Origin: Saccostrea cucullata
Lineage: Eukaryota
NCBI RefSeq assembly: GCF_032062105.1
Contig: NW_026935291.1
Location: forward strand, 496,001-560,000
Direction: 5' to 3'
Length of the DNA stretch: 64,000 nt
Shown here: piece by piece, positions 23,167 through 31,113 of the stretch
Numbering within the stretch: the first letter of the stretch is position 1
Layout: each line of letters starts with the position of its first letter
Notes under the pieces: model-generated
What the model saw: the letters and a program-made list of their open reading frames with translations, nothing else
The model's database searches: none
What the model was told of the DNA's origin: nothing
Made by a program: the position numbers and the translations under genes

Positions 23167-23578
23167 GTAAATCATGCCCTTTATTCAGTGTCGACCAAAT
23201 TATACTTGACAAACTGAAACATTGCTCCCCAAAAAAACTTTGACTGGCTGTTTGCAAACAGAAACCTTAAGACCCCAAAAACCACTCGGAGCTCCTCGGG
23301 TGGCACGTACCTCGCATACTAACCTCGGACGTCAAAGGTGATCTACCATATTACTGATTCACTCATGTGATCTTATTTGAATGTTTTTTTTAATGTTGAA
23401 ATCTGAGTTATTTGGTGGCACATCCTACCCTATAGCGTCTTTCTATAACTAGGTTATCTTTCTTGAAAATCGGAACTCTTTTATGCAAGAATTTTTTCTA
23501 TTTGTACTTCCGGTAGGTAAAAAAAAAGAGATCGTCTTTGTAAACAAGTAATAAATTCGGTCATTTGTGATCCTGGTG

Positions 23579-25711
23579 ATGGGGAAATTATACTGCTGTG
23601 CCACGAACTGTCACAATTATAGTGGCAAAAATATTAAGGATAGAAAAGTGACATTACATCGATTCCCAGTTAATAAAAAACATAAAATGATATGGAAAAA
23701 CCGTGTCAGCCGCAAGAATTGGAAGCCAACAAGTTGCTCTAGACTATGTTCCGAGCATTTCATCTCGCTGTCTGGTCCGACGAAGGAGCATCCATTACCA
23801 TCTATTTTTCATCACAAAATATTTAAGACTACAAACGTATGTATTTTTTTTTTATTTATCAGAATTGGGTAAATAAAATCAAGGACGTTTTTACCAGTTT
23901 CAAGTCAAGGTGTAATGACTCGATTATAGCATGAAAAGCAGCGTACCATGATGTATAGTGATACAATGAGGTTGTATCATGATAAGCCTATGTATTGTGA
24001 TATTAATTTTATGTTCCCTGTGGTATTTAGTATAAACTGAATTTCTCTGTTTATTATTTATATCAGATTATCATGATTATTATGTGGAAGGGTGGGGATT
24101 GTAGATTTTTTTCATAAACTTGATAAAGTTTACAGTATATATTTATGTATCATTGAATTGAATAAGTTCGGAATACAGTAAATAAATATCAGAAGTAAAT
24201 AAAGATCATCAGTTTTATTAGGTTAAAGTAAAAGAACTTCATTATTTGCCTAATGCGTCATTTATCGTGATACACAGGTGTACAATTTTGTACATGTACA
24301 ATGATACGGTGCAATGTTTCGTGTATCACCACAAACTGGTATATAATTTTATTGTTACACCCGTAGTATAGACATATTTCCTTGAGGCTTAGAAAAAATC
24401 ATTATAACTAATTAGTTTATTGAATGATGTACACCATATTTGTATGCATGGATACTTATACTACACATATAAGACCTTTATTTTCAGTTTGACCAAACAA
24501 CGGAGGTTTTAAAAGAAATAAATGACAATCAACAAGAAAATACAGTGAGATCAGATTCAGAGACCTCAGAGTCCGATTCTGCTGAAAACCCTAGTTTTAC
24601 AGTTGATGCAAACAAATCTGTATTGGACACATCCGTATTAATGCACGATTACTGTGGATTGATAGAAACATCAACCTTATCTCATCAGAAAAATCAACTG
24701 ACACAAACTGATGTTCAACAGAATGACAGTGTTTGTATTCAGACAATTGAAAGTTACCTTGATACATGTGGGAGTAATATGGTCTCTTCAAAAAAATTAT
24801 GTGACAAAAGTACTGGTACAACCTTACCGTTTTTAACAGTTGAAGACTTGAAACAGGATATTTCATTTTATACTGGTCTGCCAAACAAGGAGACTTTTTA
24901 TTTATTATTCCAACATCTGTCAGACTTTCATAAATGTACAGTTCCTGATACTGGAGGAAGACCCAAAAAAATGAGAGATATTGATGAGTTTTTAATGGTA
25001 TTAATGCGTTTAAGGTTAGGACTCTTAATTCAAGATTTGGCTAAAAGATTTAATATATCTGTGTCAACCTGCAGTAAAATTTTTAATGAATGGTTAGATT
25101 TGATGTATGAGCATCTAGACTTTTTAGTAGCTTGGCCAGAACGGAATGTTATCAAAGAAAACATGCCTGACAGTTTTAAACGAAGGTACCCAAATTGTCG
25201 TGTTATTATTGACTGCACTGAGATCTATACAGAAACACCTCAGTCACTCTCCAACAAAGCAAGGATGTATTCAGACTACAAGTCACACATGACATGGAAA
25301 GTGCTCATTGGAATTAGCCCTAGTGGAGTGATTACACATGTCTCCGATTTATGGACTGGAAGTACATCAGACAAACAAATCACAAAGTTGTCAAAATTAA
25401 TTGAAAAATGTGAACCTGGGGATGCAATAATTGGTGACAAAGGGTTCCTCATTGCTGACCTATGCACTCCAAATGGAATTCATCTCATTATCCCCCCTTT
25501 AAAGAAACATGGTAGGCTAACTAAATCTGAAGTGGAAAAAACCAGAAGGATTGCAAATTTAAGAATCCATGTGGAACGAGCAATGGAGCGAATAAAAAAC
25601 TTCAAAATTATTCAAGGTGTGGTTCCAATATCACTTCACGACAAAGTGTCCAAAATAGTGTTTGTTGTGTGTGCTCTCTGTAATCTCATGCCCCCACTTA
25701 TTCAGTCATAG
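23579..25711 (+). CDS. THAP-HTH-DDE (Harbinger/ISL2EU, DDE_Tnp_4-type) transposase, ~493 aa, apparently intact
   Basis: Exon 23579-23836 encodes THAP (CCATNC..LHRFP..W..SRLCSEHF..LPSIF) and joins exon 24488-25711 in phase 0. Exon 2 has the HTH (FLMVLMRLRLGL..DLAKRFNISVSTCSKIF) and the catalytic motifs IIDCTE, GDKGF and RIHVERAMERIK. Confidence 0.92.
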
Positions 25712-26327
25712 TATAATCTACTATGTAAATCATAAAAATAATGTATCTCTCAGAATAACTATAAGCATTAAGTACTTCATTGTGCAACATACTGCATATG
25801 TAGAGGAAAACTTGTTATTAAGTAGTTATACCATTTAATAAATAGCAAAAATCTACTTACATTTTACATTATTTTTATTAGGTATGTCGATCATGAGCAA
25901 GTAAGAAATCAAGTGTTCCAAAGATCATAGCAATGATGAGCCAGAATGACTTCATTCATTTGCACTGCCATTTCTTATGCCAGAAAATCTTAAAATTCTA
26001 CATTTAAAAAGATTCAGAAATATATCAATTCAGTTGACTGTTATTAAAGTAACTGTATGAATCAAGTTTTTAAAATAAATGCATCATGTCCTTGTATCAT
26101 TGCAATGATCTTTGGTCTTGTGTAAAATTTATTACTATATTATCATGATTATGAGGTACCGTAATGTATGTACCTACATTTAGAAAATTAACATAAAGTA
26201 CTCTGTTATAAATTTATTGATCAGATACTCACAAGTATTACAAAATATGTTGATTATGATACCAAAGTACATGTACACATACCCTAAATGCACAGTTAAG
26301 TTATGTAATACCTGGTCATGCTTATTA

Positions 26328-29700: not shown

Positions 29701-29914
29701 GAACCCCCACCTATGGGAGGGGGAAACCCCCTCCCATGCCCTCCCCCTTCGGCCCTTTGGGCCTCAAAACCCCCCCACTTGAACTTCTGGATCCGCCACT
29801 GTTTGCACCTTTAGCTCTCTGTATAAGTTCAGGTTTGTTTCCAAAAGTTGGTTGTTTACACTTTTTAAGAAAATCAATTAGTTGTTTCTTTGTCATTTTA
29901 TCAAAGGCCTCCAT
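26799..29914 (-). CDS. SAP-SWIM-YqaJ (lambda-exonuclease-like) accessory protein of the transposon, ~575 aa when reconstructed; exon 1 interrupted by a nested element
   Basis: Segments 29914-29802 and 28797-28351 (exon 1, GG|GTAAGT) plus 27966-26799 (CTAG|A). SAP-like MTKKQLIDFLKKCKQPTFGNKPELIQRA; SWIM ECNCVAG/EGGACNHIAALL split by the intron; YqaJ motifs TKGQ..W..ARHGRLTAS, GREHE, LGASPDG, IEVKCPY and YYYQVQG. Confidence 0.88.
28804..29801. mobile_element. 998-bp non-autonomous element (hAT-like termini) with 6-bp TSD
   Basis: TTTGCA|CAAGGGCGGATTCAGG ... CTGGATCCGCCACTG|TTTGCA. Removing it and one TSD restores the host reading frame (RAKGA-KDLGLD). Confidence 0.85.
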
Positions 29915-31113
29915 TTTTAAACGATTTAGCAACGTCCTTGGCGCATGACGCTTCACCCTACATCAGCAACTTTTACCTACCGGAAGTTATAAACCTCCAA
30001 TACTAGAGAGTGCCTATGGGGAGGTAACTAGGTTATCGAAAGAGGCTTATGTTCTTGCTTTCAAAAACTACTATCATATTGTTGTAATTAAAAGCAATAT
30101 ACATGTATAATGAAGAATTAGACAAATAAAGAAACGTTTTCGAAGAATTTGAGGCAGAGCGAAATATGAAATGAGTAAGAAAGCTGTTTTCGGCGGAGAA
30201 ATGTATATTGACCTGATGGGTATTCCCCCACCTATCACATCCGAGGTTTGTGTGGAGCGAAGCAGAGTCGGCCGATGATTGCCGATTGCCAGAAAACTTT
30301 GCAGAATTTATTACATGTTCTTTTATTACTCTGCATCAATAAAAAAATCTAATTTCTTTAAACTTTCACACAAGAGACACTGCATGATAAAAAAAAACTA
30401 CAAAGGTAATCAAGGAATTATGGAAACAGTTTATTCAATCATAAATGTGCATTTTGTAACAGGCAATAGGACTGACAGACAACGCTCAGCGGATGTCGTT
30501 TACACAGGCCAGAGATTACAGCTAGTCAAGGTTACGGAGGGGACTTGGCCAGCATCCACGGTGCTGGGGAAAACAGTTTTATTCAAATTTTAACACAGTA
30601 AAACAAAAACCATTTCTTTTTGGTTTATAACTTTTAACTATGAGACGTGTTCATAGCTGCTGTTCTTTTAAACTTTGAAATATTTGCTATATTTACTTCT
30701 TTTCGCATGATTTGAGTTCAAAGCATCACGATATACTTTTATTACAGAGAAGTTGCAGAAATTCTTAGACTATGCCTGATACAGTTCCAATATAAAACTT
30801 CGTCATTATTTCTAAATTGTACTTTACACACTACAAAAATTGTTGCTGTACATTATGTACTTTTCGTAAAGACAAACAGGAAGGAGATACTTTAGAATAT
30901 AAGAACTACTTCGCTTACTTGATAGACATGTGACAGTTTTGTTTTACAAAATCACACATTTTGAGAAAATAATCCATTCAGACAACATGCAAACCGTGAC
31001 CACCTGATCAACCCTGCCCTTATAATAATGGATAACGTTATTAAATAATTTAAAAGTCAATTTTTTTCCACAGAGACATATTTCAGTTGCAGTTGTTCTT
31101 TCCTTTCATTATC

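What the first reader, a model, noticed from the sequence alone, without database searches (positions are those of the whole stretch)
23434..30047. Two-component transposon: intact THAP-DDE transposase paired with a SAP-SWIM-YqaJ nuclease
Seen: TIR-bounded element with two convergent, single-intron genes. The ORF track shows only fragments; splicing and removing one nested insert gives a 493-aa transposase and a 575-aa protein with an N-terminal SAP DNA-binding motif, a SWIM Zn finger (split by the intron) and a lambda-exonuclease/YqaJ domain with intact PDG...EVK residues. Established: ISL2EU elements of the Harbinger-like group pair a THAP-DDE transposase with a YqaJ protein, in place of the Myb/SANT partner of PIF/Harbinger. 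To my knowledge the nuclease's role is uncharacterised. Inference: SAP/SWIM tether a 5'-3' exonuclease that resects the donor break or processes element ends, giving the element its own repair/recombination module. Neither reconstructed frame has a stop, so the copy is young and could be resurrected.
Basis: partly seen in the sequence, partly recalled or inferred. Interest (0 to 1): 0.78.

Follow-up and report, generated by a model that had tools for sequence, protein, structure and literature searches.

The report
Oyster ISL2EU transposon with nuclease partner

Summary
Window 23434-30047 is a TIR-bounded element present at about 9 loci in this oyster genome. It has two convergent one-intron genes.

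- **Transposase:** 493 aa with THAP, HTH_Tnp_4 and DDE_Tnp_4 domains.
- **Partner protein:** 575 aa with SAP, SWIM and YqaJ domains. In this copy its first exon is split by a 998-bp nested repeat.
- **Splicing:** both introns are seen spliced in public transcript contigs.
- **Nuclease domain:** it keeps the catalytic D, E and K and the 5'-phosphate-pocket Arg, and its model superposes on lambda exonuclease (Z 18.6).
- **SWIM:** Pfam does not detect it, but the CxCx9CxH motif is conserved and the domain superposes on ZSWIM8 (Z 10.3).
- **Selection:** both genes are under purifying selection (omega about 0.10 and 0.20).
- **Pairing:** the convergent pair recurs in at least 40 loci of other families here, and in mussel, a gastropod and a PHD-bearing variant.

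All of this matches the published ISL2EU group (THAP-DDE transposase plus YqaJ ORF2, AT duplication), which already includes four Crassostrea gigas families. I file it as a new member of a known kind.

The resection-and-repair role proposed for the nuclease is plausible and fits the conserved residues, but it is untested. The scan had already noted this element's 17-bp subterminal motif on the same stretch (s1-725432).

The parts
23432..23433 (.). Left copy of the probable 2-bp AT target-site duplication (preceded by T)
   Evidence: Every copy reads T-AT-AGCG at this end. Empty paralogous or allelic sites fit a 2-bp duplication by length.
23434..23459 (+). Left terminal inverted repeat, beginning AGCGTCTTTCTATAAC
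   Evidence: Shared start of 8 other loci. It aligns with the reverse complement of the right end. The core is conserved in the Mytilus element.
23506..23522 (+). Subterminal 17-nt motif ACTTCCGGTAGGTAAAA, 72 nt from the end and 56 nt before the transposase ATG
   Evidence: Perfect inverted pair with 29971-29987. Its 13-nt core is almost confined to this family in the genome and is conserved at both ends of the mussel element.
23579..23836 (+). Transposase exon 1 (86 codons, THAP zinc finger)
   Evidence: Pfam THAP 1.4e-10. Open frame. The donor GTATGT follows. The intron is seen spliced as joint 1906->2558 on copy L003.
24488..25711 (+). Transposase exon 2 (407 codons plus stop; HTH_Tnp_4 and DDE_Tnp_4)
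   Evidence: Pfam HTH_Tnp_4 3.5e-18 and DDE_Tnp_4 1.8e-47 over the full model. The IDCTE, GDKGF and VERAMERIK motifs are present in the translation.
26240..26798 (.). Spacer between the two stop codons, holding a very high-copy repeat bounded by 30-nt inverted arms
   Evidence: Inverted repeat I1, 26329-26358 / 26737-26766. Depth is 10^4-10^5 against about 300 elsewhere in DNA contigs. Present in all family copies.
26799..27966 (-). Nuclease gene exon 2 (second half of the SWIM finger, a linker, and the YqaJ / lambda-exonuclease domain with PDG...EVK)
   Evidence: Pfam YqaJ 9e-19. PDB sequence matches to LHK-Exo 1.1e-5 and lambda exonuclease 1.4e-3. The model of a 95%-identical homologue gives Z 18.6 to lambda exonuclease.
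27967..28350 (-). Intron of the nuclease gene (GTAAGT...TTCTAG), splitting the SWIM motif
   Evidence: Sequence. Spliced joint 6031->6424 on copy L003 in three runs. Same junction in the annotated protein P0001.
28351..28797 (-). Nuclease gene exon 1, distal part (pre-SWIM beta domain and the first CxC of SWIM)
   Evidence: Open frame. 98% identical to P0001. The modelled domain matches ZSWIM8.
28804..29801 (.). Nested 998-bp TIR element (CAGTGGCGGATCCAG ends) inserted in the coding exon, flanked by a duplicated TGCAAA
   Evidence: At least 60 copies elsewhere and absent from all other family copies. Junctions read.
29802..29914 (-). Nuclease gene exon 1, proximal part (ATG and SAP motif)
   Evidence: Pfam SAP 1.2e-6, 28.4 bits against a cut-off of 23.9. 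Open frame.
29971..29987 (-). Right copy of the 17-nt subterminal motif, 60 nt from the end and 56 nt before the nuclease ATG
30022..30047 (-). Right terminal inverted repeat, reading AGCCTCTTTCGATAAC on the reverse complement

Best explanation
**What it is (shown).** This is a young copy of an ISL2EU-group cut-and-paste DNA transposon (PIF/Harbinger-ISL2EU-Spy superfamily) in an oyster genome. It measures 6.6 kb, or 5.6 kb without a nested repeat. Its termini are imperfect 26-nt TIRs, and each end carries a conserved subterminal 13-17-nt motif. The element encodes a THAP-HTH-DDE transposase and, convergently, a SAP-SWIM-YqaJ protein. Both genes are spliced and transcribed and have been kept by purifying selection. 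The family has inserted recently.

**How it works (inferred).** The partner protein is an active lambda-exonuclease-type 5'->3' nuclease, and its nuclease activity, not just DNA binding, is what the element needs.
- The SWIM domain is universal in these partner proteins. It is combined with a lineage-specific tether, SAP in molluscs or a C-terminal PHD finger elsewhere. These would bring the nuclease to DNA or chromatin near the transposase.
- The nuclease would then digest the 5'-phosphorylated strands exposed by transposase cleavage.
- The most likely target is the donor break, resected so that homologous repair from the sister or homologue re-copies the element.

I put about 0.95 on the identity and about 0.35-0.4 on this particular mechanism. 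The single confidence figure blends the two.
For: **Anatomy and domains.**

**Defined ends and copy number.** The element has the same ends at about 9 independent loci.

**Literature.** The THAP-HTH-DDE plus YqaJ pairing, the AT duplication and animal hosts define ISL2EU. Four C. gigas families are listed (PMC4482050 text and Table S2; PMC4122938).

**Nuclease competence.**
- P-D-G, E-x-K, the WG..HE motif and the Arg aligned with lambda exonuclease's 5'-phosphate-binding Arg are conserved in 90% or more of 25 homologues, down to 25% identity.
- Fold matches are Z 18.6 to lambda exonuclease and 18.2 to LHK-Exo.

**SWIM.** The motif is conserved and the domain matches ZSWIM8 with Z 10.3, rmsd 2.7 over 99 residues.

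**Selection.**
- Pairwise omega is 0.10-0.13 for the transposase and 0.18-0.26 for the nuclease gene.
- Among five young copies the counts are 21 synonymous against 8 non-synonymous for the transposase (P 3e-9).
- For the nuclease gene they are 36 against 28 (P 4e-10).

**Obligate pairing.**
- At least 40 same-contig convergent pairs from several diverged families occur in this genome, and identities of the two genes fall together.
- The same convergent pair is seen in Mytilus, Gigantopelta and a PHD-type element.

**Expression and activity.**
- Both introns are spliced in transcript contigs.
- The insertion at locus L003 is absent in DNA contigs and RNA reads of other samples.
Against: - No experiment or sequence feature here shows which ends the nuclease acts on, or that it is required for transposition.
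- Related PIF/Harbinger and Spy transposases move without any nuclease partner, so the nuclease is not needed for the basic chemistry.
- No annealase (Red-beta or YqaK type) is encoded, so any recombination must use host factors.
- Lambda exonuclease is a toroidal trimer. Whether this 575-aa multidomain protein oligomerises the same way is unknown.
- The Pfam SWIM model does not hit.
- TIRs start AG, not the GG that is usual for ISL2EU.
- The duplication could not be fixed to the base. One locus reads as TAT, and two fit AT only by length, with substitutions.
Confidence: 0.5

Rival explanations
1. **Recruitment cofactor.** The SAP-SWIM-YqaJ protein mainly does the job of the Harbinger Myb-like partner. 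It would bind subterminal sites such as the conserved 13-nt motif, recruit or import the transposase and assemble the synaptic complex. The nuclease activity would be secondary.
For: - ISL2EU elements carry this ORF exactly where relatives carry the Myb/SANT DNA-binding partner.
- The protein has dedicated DNA or chromatin modules, SAP, SWIM or PHD.
- A family-specific 13-mer sits at conserved distances from both ends in oyster and mussel.
Against: - The catalytic D, E, K and the 5'-phosphate-pocket Arg are the most conserved positions of the whole protein, down to 25% identity. A pure adaptor would not need them.
- The transposase already has its own THAP and HTH DNA-binding domains.
Confidence: 0.2
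2. **TnsA-like second-strand nuclease.** The PD-(D/E)XK partner would cut the 5' strands at the element ends while the DDE transposase cuts the 3' strands. That would make a heteromeric transposase like Tn7 TnsA/TnsB.
For: - Both proteins are always co-encoded and co-diverge.
- The partner belongs to the same PD-(D/E)XK superfamily as TnsA (fold matches).
- ISL2EU makes a 2-bp rather than the 3-bp Harbinger duplication, which hints at altered cleavage geometry.
Against: - The closest structures are processive exonucleases, lambda exonuclease and LHK-Exo at Z 18, not restriction-type endonucleases.
- The 5'-phosphate pocket Arg, which serves an enzyme that needs a pre-existing end, is conserved.
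- Homologous Harbinger and Spy transposases excise without such a partner.
Confidence: 0.12
3. **Processing of the excised element or target.** The nuclease would act on the excised element or the target rather than the donor. It might trim 5' flaps or non-transferred-strand overhangs before or after integration. Alternatively it might degrade unintegrated linear copies.
For: - It rests on the same enzymology as the main model.
- Lambda-exonuclease-like nucleases were acquired independently by another superfamily (KolobokE), and a DnaQ exonuclease by KolobokD. The authors of that work suggest they degrade transposition intermediates (PMC9587614).
Against: - There is no direct evidence.
- 5'->3' digestion of the excised element would destroy the strand complementary to the transferred 3' ends unless it is tightly limited.
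Confidence: 0.1
4. **Passenger gene.** The second gene would be a captured passenger with no role in transposition.
For: None, beyond the lack of experiments.
Against: - The convergent pairing is conserved across bivalves, a gastropod and PHD-type elements, and across at least 40 pairs from several families in this genome.
- Omega of about 0.2 is maintained among copies of a mobile family.
- The introns and the subterminal motif are conserved between oyster and mussel.
Confidence: 0.03

Closest known systems
ISL2EU (IS4EU) DNA transposons, e.g. the four Crassostrea gigas families of Han et al. 2015 (Repbase ISL2EU-8, -10, -11 and -15_CGi)
   Same: - Animal host and a 4-7 kb TIR element.
- ORF1 with THAP, HTH_Tnp_4 and DDE_Tnp_4 (444-537 aa).
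- ORF2 with YqaJ (about 480-545 aa).
- Low copy number and a probable AT duplication.
   Different: - TIRs begin AG rather than the usual GG.
- The bases flanking the AT are T and A (a TATA-like target), not A and T.
- The SAP and SWIM parts of ORF2 are not mentioned in the papers held here.
PIF/Harbinger elements (e.g. Harbinger3_DR)
   Same: - Related DDE_Tnp_4 transposase.
- Two-gene design in which both products are needed.
- Subterminal binding sites.
   Different: - The partner there is a Myb/SANT DNA-binding protein with no enzyme activity.
- The duplication is 3 bp (TWA).
- The transposase has no THAP domain.
Lambda exonuclease / LHK-Exo / YqaJ (phage Red-type 5'->3' exonucleases)
   Same: - Fold: Z 18-19, rmsd about 3 A over 185-205 residues.
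- Catalytic D, E and K.
- The Arg aligned with the lambda exonuclease 5'-phosphate-binding residue.
   Different: - Here the nuclease is fused behind SAP and SWIM domains and a 100-aa linker.
- No annealase partner is encoded.
- It is a eukaryotic nuclear gene with an intron.
- Its oligomeric state is unknown.
KolobokE / KolobokD transposons (PMC9587614)
   Same: A cut-and-paste DDE transposon that has recruited an exonuclease: lambda-exonuclease-like in KolobokE and DnaQ-type in KolobokD.
   Different: - Different transposase superfamily.
- In KolobokE the nuclease is fused downstream of the transposase rather than encoded as a separate convergent gene.
Tn7 TnsA/TnsB
   Same: A DDE enzyme paired with a PD-(D/E)XK nuclease within one mobile element.
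   Different: - TnsA is a restriction-type endonuclease that cuts the 5' strands.
- The protein here resembles end-dependent exonucleases.
- No evidence of a heteromeric complex was obtained.

Membership tests
ISL2EU group (PHIS superfamily) | Transposase with an IS5/Harbinger-type DDE domain (DDE_Tnp_4) and HTH_Tnp_4 | tested here: met
   Pfam DDE_Tnp_4 1.8e-47 over model positions 1-158 of 158; HTH_Tnp_4 3.5e-18.
ISL2EU group (PHIS superfamily) | N-terminal THAP zinc finger on the transposase | tested here: met
   Pfam THAP 1.4e-10 on exon 1. The C..C...C..H pattern and the LPSIF box are visible in the translation.
ISL2EU group (PHIS superfamily) | [quoted passage not shown] | tested here: met
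   Pfam YqaJ 9e-19, PDB sequence matches and fold Z 18.6. None of the five ORFs of the element that were scanned gave a Myb/SANT hit.
ISL2EU group (PHIS superfamily) | 2-bp AT target-site duplication | tested here: inconclusive
   - Seven of nine left ends and five of seven right ends read T-AT-element-AT-A.
- The empty paralogue of L002 and the empty allele of L003 have the length predicted by a 2-bp AT duplication, but with 1 and 2 substitutions.
- The window's own empty paralogues read as a TAT duplication unless the right terminus carries one extra T, as it also does in L004.
- AT is the most parsimonious reading.
ISL2EU group (PHIS superfamily) | TIRs that usually begin with GG | tested here: not met
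   Termini are AGCG... and AGCC... in the oyster and AGCC... in the mussel. The source paper says 'usually', so this is a soft criterion.
ISL2EU group (PHIS superfamily) | Transposase falls within the ISL2EU clade in a DDE-core phylogeny | not tested
Lambda exonuclease / YqaJ PD-(D/E)XK nucleases | Catalytic Asp, Glu and Lys, plus the Arg of the 5'-phosphate pocket | tested here: met
   - ASPDG...EVK aligns with lambda exonuclease SPDG...ELK and LHK-Exo SPDG...EIK.
- WREARHGRLTAS aligns with lambda exonuclease WHKLRLGVITAS.
- These columns are 90% or more conserved in 25 homologues.
Lambda exonuclease / YqaJ PD-(D/E)XK nucleases | Fold | tested here: met
   The model is of P0001, 95% identical to the window's protein. 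Its residues 332-571 align to 3sm4_B with Z 18.6, rmsd 2.9 over 205 residues. They align to 3sz4 with Z 18.2. Foldseek gives E 8e-11.
Lambda exonuclease / YqaJ PD-(D/E)XK nucleases | Toroidal trimer and processive 5'->3' digestion | not testable with these tools
   Only a monomer model was made.
Lambda Red-type two-protein recombination module | A single-strand annealing protein encoded beside the exonuclease | tested here: not met
   The element holds only the two genes. No other ORF of 50 aa or more has a domain hit.
SWIM zinc finger | CxCxnCxH signature in a beta-beta-alpha unit | tested here: met
   - The CNC-x9-CNH motif spans the intron and is present in the annotated homologues.
- It is conserved across SAP-type and PHD-type proteins.
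- Model residues 83-206 align to ZSWIM8 residues 110-213 with Z 10.3, rmsd 2.7 over 99 residues.
SWIM zinc finger | Match to Pfam SWIM (PF04434) | tested here: not met
No hit at E <= 0.05 on four natural full-length homologues.
SAP domain | Match to Pfam SAP above the curated cut-off | tested here: met
   28.4 bits against a cut-off of 23.9, E 1.2e-6. It also hits in the Mytilus, Patella and Gigantopelta homologues.
PIF/Harbinger sensu stricto | Myb/SANT partner ORF and a 3-bp TWA duplication | tested here: not met
   The partner is SAP-SWIM-YqaJ. The junctions do not give a TWA direct repeat.

The most novel reading that the evidence does not exclude
ISL2EU elements would be eukaryotic heteromeric transposons. 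In this reading the SWIM-YqaJ nuclease is an integral catalytic subunit and not a repair accessory. It would either make or enlarge the second-strand cut at the element ends, as TnsA does in Tn7. Alternatively it would commit the donor break to homologous repair, so that a cut-and-paste element is in effect copied. The SAP or PHD add-ons would choose the chromatin where this happens, and the conserved 13-nt subterminal motif would be the docking site of the complex.
Probability: 0.12. Interest if true: 0.72.

Novelty: new member of a known kind. Interest (0 to 1): 0.3.

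Why it matters
As a finding it mostly confirms textbook-level transposon classification. The two-gene ISL2EU design, oyster families included, was catalogued by 2015.

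What remains open is why a whole group of cut-and-paste elements swapped the Myb-like cofactor of its Harbinger relatives for a lambda-exonuclease-type nuclease.

This family offers a reasonable natural system for that question:
- it is low-copy and transcribed, and its genes are correctly spliced;
- one locus lacks the insertion in DNA contigs and RNA reads of other samples;
- some natural copies have open frames;
- its cis motifs are conserved as far as mussels.

Three details seem not to be spelled out in the papers I could read, and they sharpen testable hypotheses:
- the SWIM-plus-YqaJ core is universal, while SAP and PHD are alternative add-ons;
- the catalytic residues and the 5'-phosphate-pocket residue are the best-conserved positions;
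- the two genes co-diverge.

These are increments, not a new kind of system.

Tried and rejected
- **Pfam SWIM.** It gave no hit on full-length natural homologues. I relied on the motif and the structural match instead.
- **Transposase in the PDB.** A sequence search found nothing meaningful.
- **Alternative duplication models.**
  - A TA duplication with TAGC...GCTA termini predicts empty sites 2 nt shorter than observed at L002 and L003.
  - A 3-bp TAT duplication fits only the window.
  - No duplication at all does not fit the window's empty paralogues.
  - All three were set aside in favour of AT, without certainty.
- **Non-autonomous relatives.** A search for relatives with the same termini found only the family itself plus two chance matches, L051 and L055.
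- **Flank searches.** The flanks of L003 and L005 gave no empty paralogue in the assembly.
- **Other families in this genome.** A pattern count replaced it.
- **Encoding contigs.** P0001 and P0034 are not on record. No transposase gene was called at the Patella locus. My tblastn there found only short matches to transposase pieces, next to and 6 kb beyond the nuclease gene.
- **Strand of transcription.** It could not be read from run X21, because the flanks show equal depth in both directions.
- **Joined proteins.** Every search used single exons by reference, and the fold used the natural annotated homologue P0001.

Full report
**Observation**

The region was read directly. An own-genome DNA search with window 23200-30300 found eight further loci. 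They align continuously from window 23431 to 28804 and from 29802 to 30047. This shows three things:
- The element is a discrete repeat with fixed ends.
- The 998 bases between those blocks (28804-29801) are a nested insertion private to this copy.
- That insert is itself a repeat with at least 60 copies.

Local BLAST of the termini put the shared ends at 23431 and 30047. The two ends form an imperfect inverted repeat of about 26 nt.

**Gene models**

- **Transposase (+ strand).**
  - It starts at ATG 23579. Exon 1 ends at 23836 before GTATGT, and exon 2 runs from 24488, after TTTCAG, to the stop at 25711. That is 86 + 407 = 493 codons without a stop.
  - Pfam finds THAP on exon 1 and HTH_Tnp_4 plus a full-length DDE_Tnp_4 on exon 2.
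- **Second gene (- strand).**
  - It starts at ATG 29914 and is cut at 29802/28797 by the nested element, which is flanked by a duplicated TGCAAA.
  - It continues to a GTAAGT donor after 28351 and resumes at 27966 after TTCTAG. It stops at 26799, giving 575 codons.
  - Pfam finds SAP on the first piece and YqaJ on the last exon.

Each exon was translated and searched on its own, by reference.

Independent support for the splice model:
- An annotated Saccostrea cucullata protein, P0001, is 95-98% identical exon by exon. It reads straight across both the insertion site and the intron, exactly as predicted.
- Transcript contigs laid on the uninterrupted copy L003 show both introns removed at the predicted bases (joints 1906->2558 and 6031->6424).

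**The SWIM claim**

The CNC-x9-CNH motif does span the intron.
- The Pfam SWIM model did not hit four natural full-length homologues.
- The motif is conserved in every homologue that covers the region, including ones only 25-30% identical.
- In an AlphaFold model of P0001 (mean pLDDT 76), residues 83-206 superpose on the SWIM region of ZSWIM8. The match has Z 10.3, rmsd 2.7 A over 99 residues, and Foldseek gives E 1.6e-4.

I accept SWIM on motif plus fold.

**The nuclease**

- Exon 2 matches LHK-Exo (E 1e-5) and lambda exonuclease (E 1e-3) by sequence.
  - The SPDG...E-x-K active-site motifs align.
  - The Arg aligned with lambda exonuclease's 5'-phosphate-binding Arg sits within W...R.GR.TAS.
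- The model's residues 332-571 superpose on lambda exonuclease with Z 18.6 and on LHK-Exo with Z 18.2.
- In a 25-row alignment, these residues and the H.YY.Q.Q motif are the nearly invariant columns.

The domain therefore looks catalytically competent, and catalysis looks like the selected property.

**Family, age and selection**

The family occupies about nine independent loci plus one haplotig pair. Five are young, at 97-99% identity, and four are older and decayed, at 87-96%.

Frames in the other copies:
- one has two stops in the transposase gene;
- one has a frameshift in the nuclease gene;
- one has a frameshift in THAP;
- two have all exons open;
- none has the nested insert.

The window copy is therefore young but not autonomous, since its nuclease gene is physically split.

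Selection was measured exon by exon:
- Nei-Gojobori omega against the window is 0.10-0.13 for the transposase in three of the four young copies. The fourth shows no synonymous difference, so it gives no ratio. For the nuclease gene it is 0.18-0.26 in the young copies. In the old copies both genes give 0.24-0.53.
- Each variable codon among the five young copies was then counted once.
  - The transposase shows 21 synonymous against 8 non-synonymous singletons (P 3e-9 against neutrality).
  - The nuclease gene shows 36 against 28 (P 4e-10).

**Pairing elsewhere**

- Six-frame searches of the genome with each second exon gave more than 100 matches each.
  - By inspection, at least 40 same-contig pairs from several diverged families lie 0.1-2 kb apart. 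All of them are in the same convergent orientation.
  - Identities of the two genes fall together across these families: 55/46, 43/39, 47/32 and 39/31 %.
- The Mytilus galloprovincialis homologue (60% identity) lies convergent to a THAP-HTH-DDE gene, with introns at the same places.
  - That element shares the TIR core and the 13-mer CTTCCGGTAGGTA at both ends, at similar distances from the termini.
  - In this genome, 14 of the 19 occurrences of that 13-mer are in this family.
- The Gigantopelta homologue is likewise next to a convergent THAP-HTH gene.
- A distant homologue with a C-terminal PHD finger instead of SAP also lies next to convergent HTH-DDE and THAP genes.

So SWIM plus YqaJ is the constant core, and SAP or PHD is a lineage-specific add-on.

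**Target-site duplication**

- Most copies read T-AT-[element]-AT-A.
- **The window's site.** Empty sites from a tandem paralogue at window 21272|21273, and from the repeat family into which the element inserted, read ...ACCC-TAT-GTTC. The filled site has TAT on both sides.
- **L002.** An 87%-identical empty paralogue has the length predicted by an AT duplication, with one substitution.
- **L003.** DNA contigs of run X3 and 46 RNA reads of run X21 bridge the site without the element. They again show the length predicted by AT, but with two changed bases next to the junction.
- A 2-bp AT duplication is the most economical reading, with one extra T at the right terminus of the window and L004 copies. 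It is not proven.
- The L003 result also shows that this insertion is absent in other samples, so the family has been active recently, or that allele is an excision product.

**Comparison with what is known**

- Han et al. (PMC4122938, PMC4482050) define ISL2EU by four features.
  - These are a THAP-HTH-DDE transposase, an ORF2 with a YqaJ exonuclease domain, AT duplications and animal hosts.
  - They list 25 families. Four are in Crassostrea gigas, with ORF1 of 444-544 aa and ORF2 of 305-545 aa.
  - They state that the function of the extra ORF is unknown.
- A 2022 fish survey repeats this description.
- No paper in the held library from 2021 onward reports an experiment on ISL2EU.
- Kolobok lineages have independently acquired lambda-exonuclease-like and DnaQ-type exonucleases.
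- The present element meets every hard criterion I could test. It departs only in the TIR start (AG, not GG) and in the bases flanking the AT.

It is a new member of a known kind. The SAP, SWIM and PHD annotation of ORF2 is a modest addition.

**Mechanism**

*Shown:*
- two co-inherited, co-diverging, selected and expressed genes;
- an apparently competent end-dependent 5'->3' exonuclease fold, joined to DNA or chromatin-binding modules.

*Inferred:* the nuclease digests 5'-phosphorylated strands exposed by transposase cleavage, most likely at the donor break to favour homologous repair.

The rival roles are a Myb-like recruitment cofactor, a TnsA-like second-strand nuclease, processing of the excised element, and a passenger gene. 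I rank them at 0.2, 0.12, 0.1 and 0.03. The strong conservation of the catalytic and phosphate-pocket residues argues against a pure adaptor. The exonuclease-type fold, and the fact that related transposases work alone, argue against a TnsA-like role.

**Limits**

- The transposase was not placed in a phylogeny.

Noticed in passing
window 28804-29801: A 998-bp TIR element (ends CAGTGGCGGATCCAG / CAAGGGCGGATTCAG, with internal G/C-rich inverted repeats) sits in the coding exon. It is flanked by a duplicated TGCAAA (6-7 bp). The genome holds at least 60 copies at 80-96% identity, many with an internal deletion. Its superfamily was not determined.
   Followed up: partly
window 26240-26840 (inverted arms 26329-26358 and 26737-26766): The spacer between the two stop codons is a very high-copy repeat. 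Its contig depth is 10^4-10^5 against about 300 for the rest of the element in a DNA run. It is nevertheless present in every copy of the family, so it was either captured before the family spread or is the source of a MITE family.
   Followed up: no
window 23283-23430 and 30048-30290: The transposon landed inside another repeat of about 380 bp with hundreds of copies. That repeat lies in a tandemly duplicated unit of the lectin-gene region. The paralogous unit at window 20533-22037 has the empty site at 21272|21273.
   Followed up: partly
window 23506-23522 and 29971-29987; L068 7893-7905 and 14360-14373: The 13-nt core CTTCCGGTAGGTA contains an ETS-like CCGGAAGT on the other strand. It is conserved at both ends of the oyster and mussel elements, 60-77 nt from the termini. 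Within this genome it is nearly confined to this family (14 of 19 hits). It could be a promoter element or a protein docking site; this is undecided.
   Followed up: partly
own genome, e.g. C9490:52608-54968, C3202:1115-3476, C6734 (two copies): A different ISL2EU family, 39% and 43% identical to the window's nuclease and transposase exons. At least 15 copies give identical scores with long open frames of 604 and 513 aa, and all are convergent. It looks like a very recently amplified family.
   Followed up: no
L003 1498-7105 (G000:C12779): DNA contigs (run X3) and 46 RNA reads (run X21) of other samples bridge this site without the element. They carry TAC where the filled allele has AAT next to the AT. 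This is either an insertion polymorphism with odd flanking changes or an excision footprint.
   Followed up: partly
proteins P0029, P0032-P0035, P0041, P0048; locus L071: Distant SWIM-YqaJ proteins carry a C-terminal PHD finger instead of the N-terminal SAP. At least one of them lies convergent to HTH-DDE and THAP genes. The chromatin or DNA tether of the ISL2EU partner protein is therefore interchangeable between lineages.
   Followed up: partly
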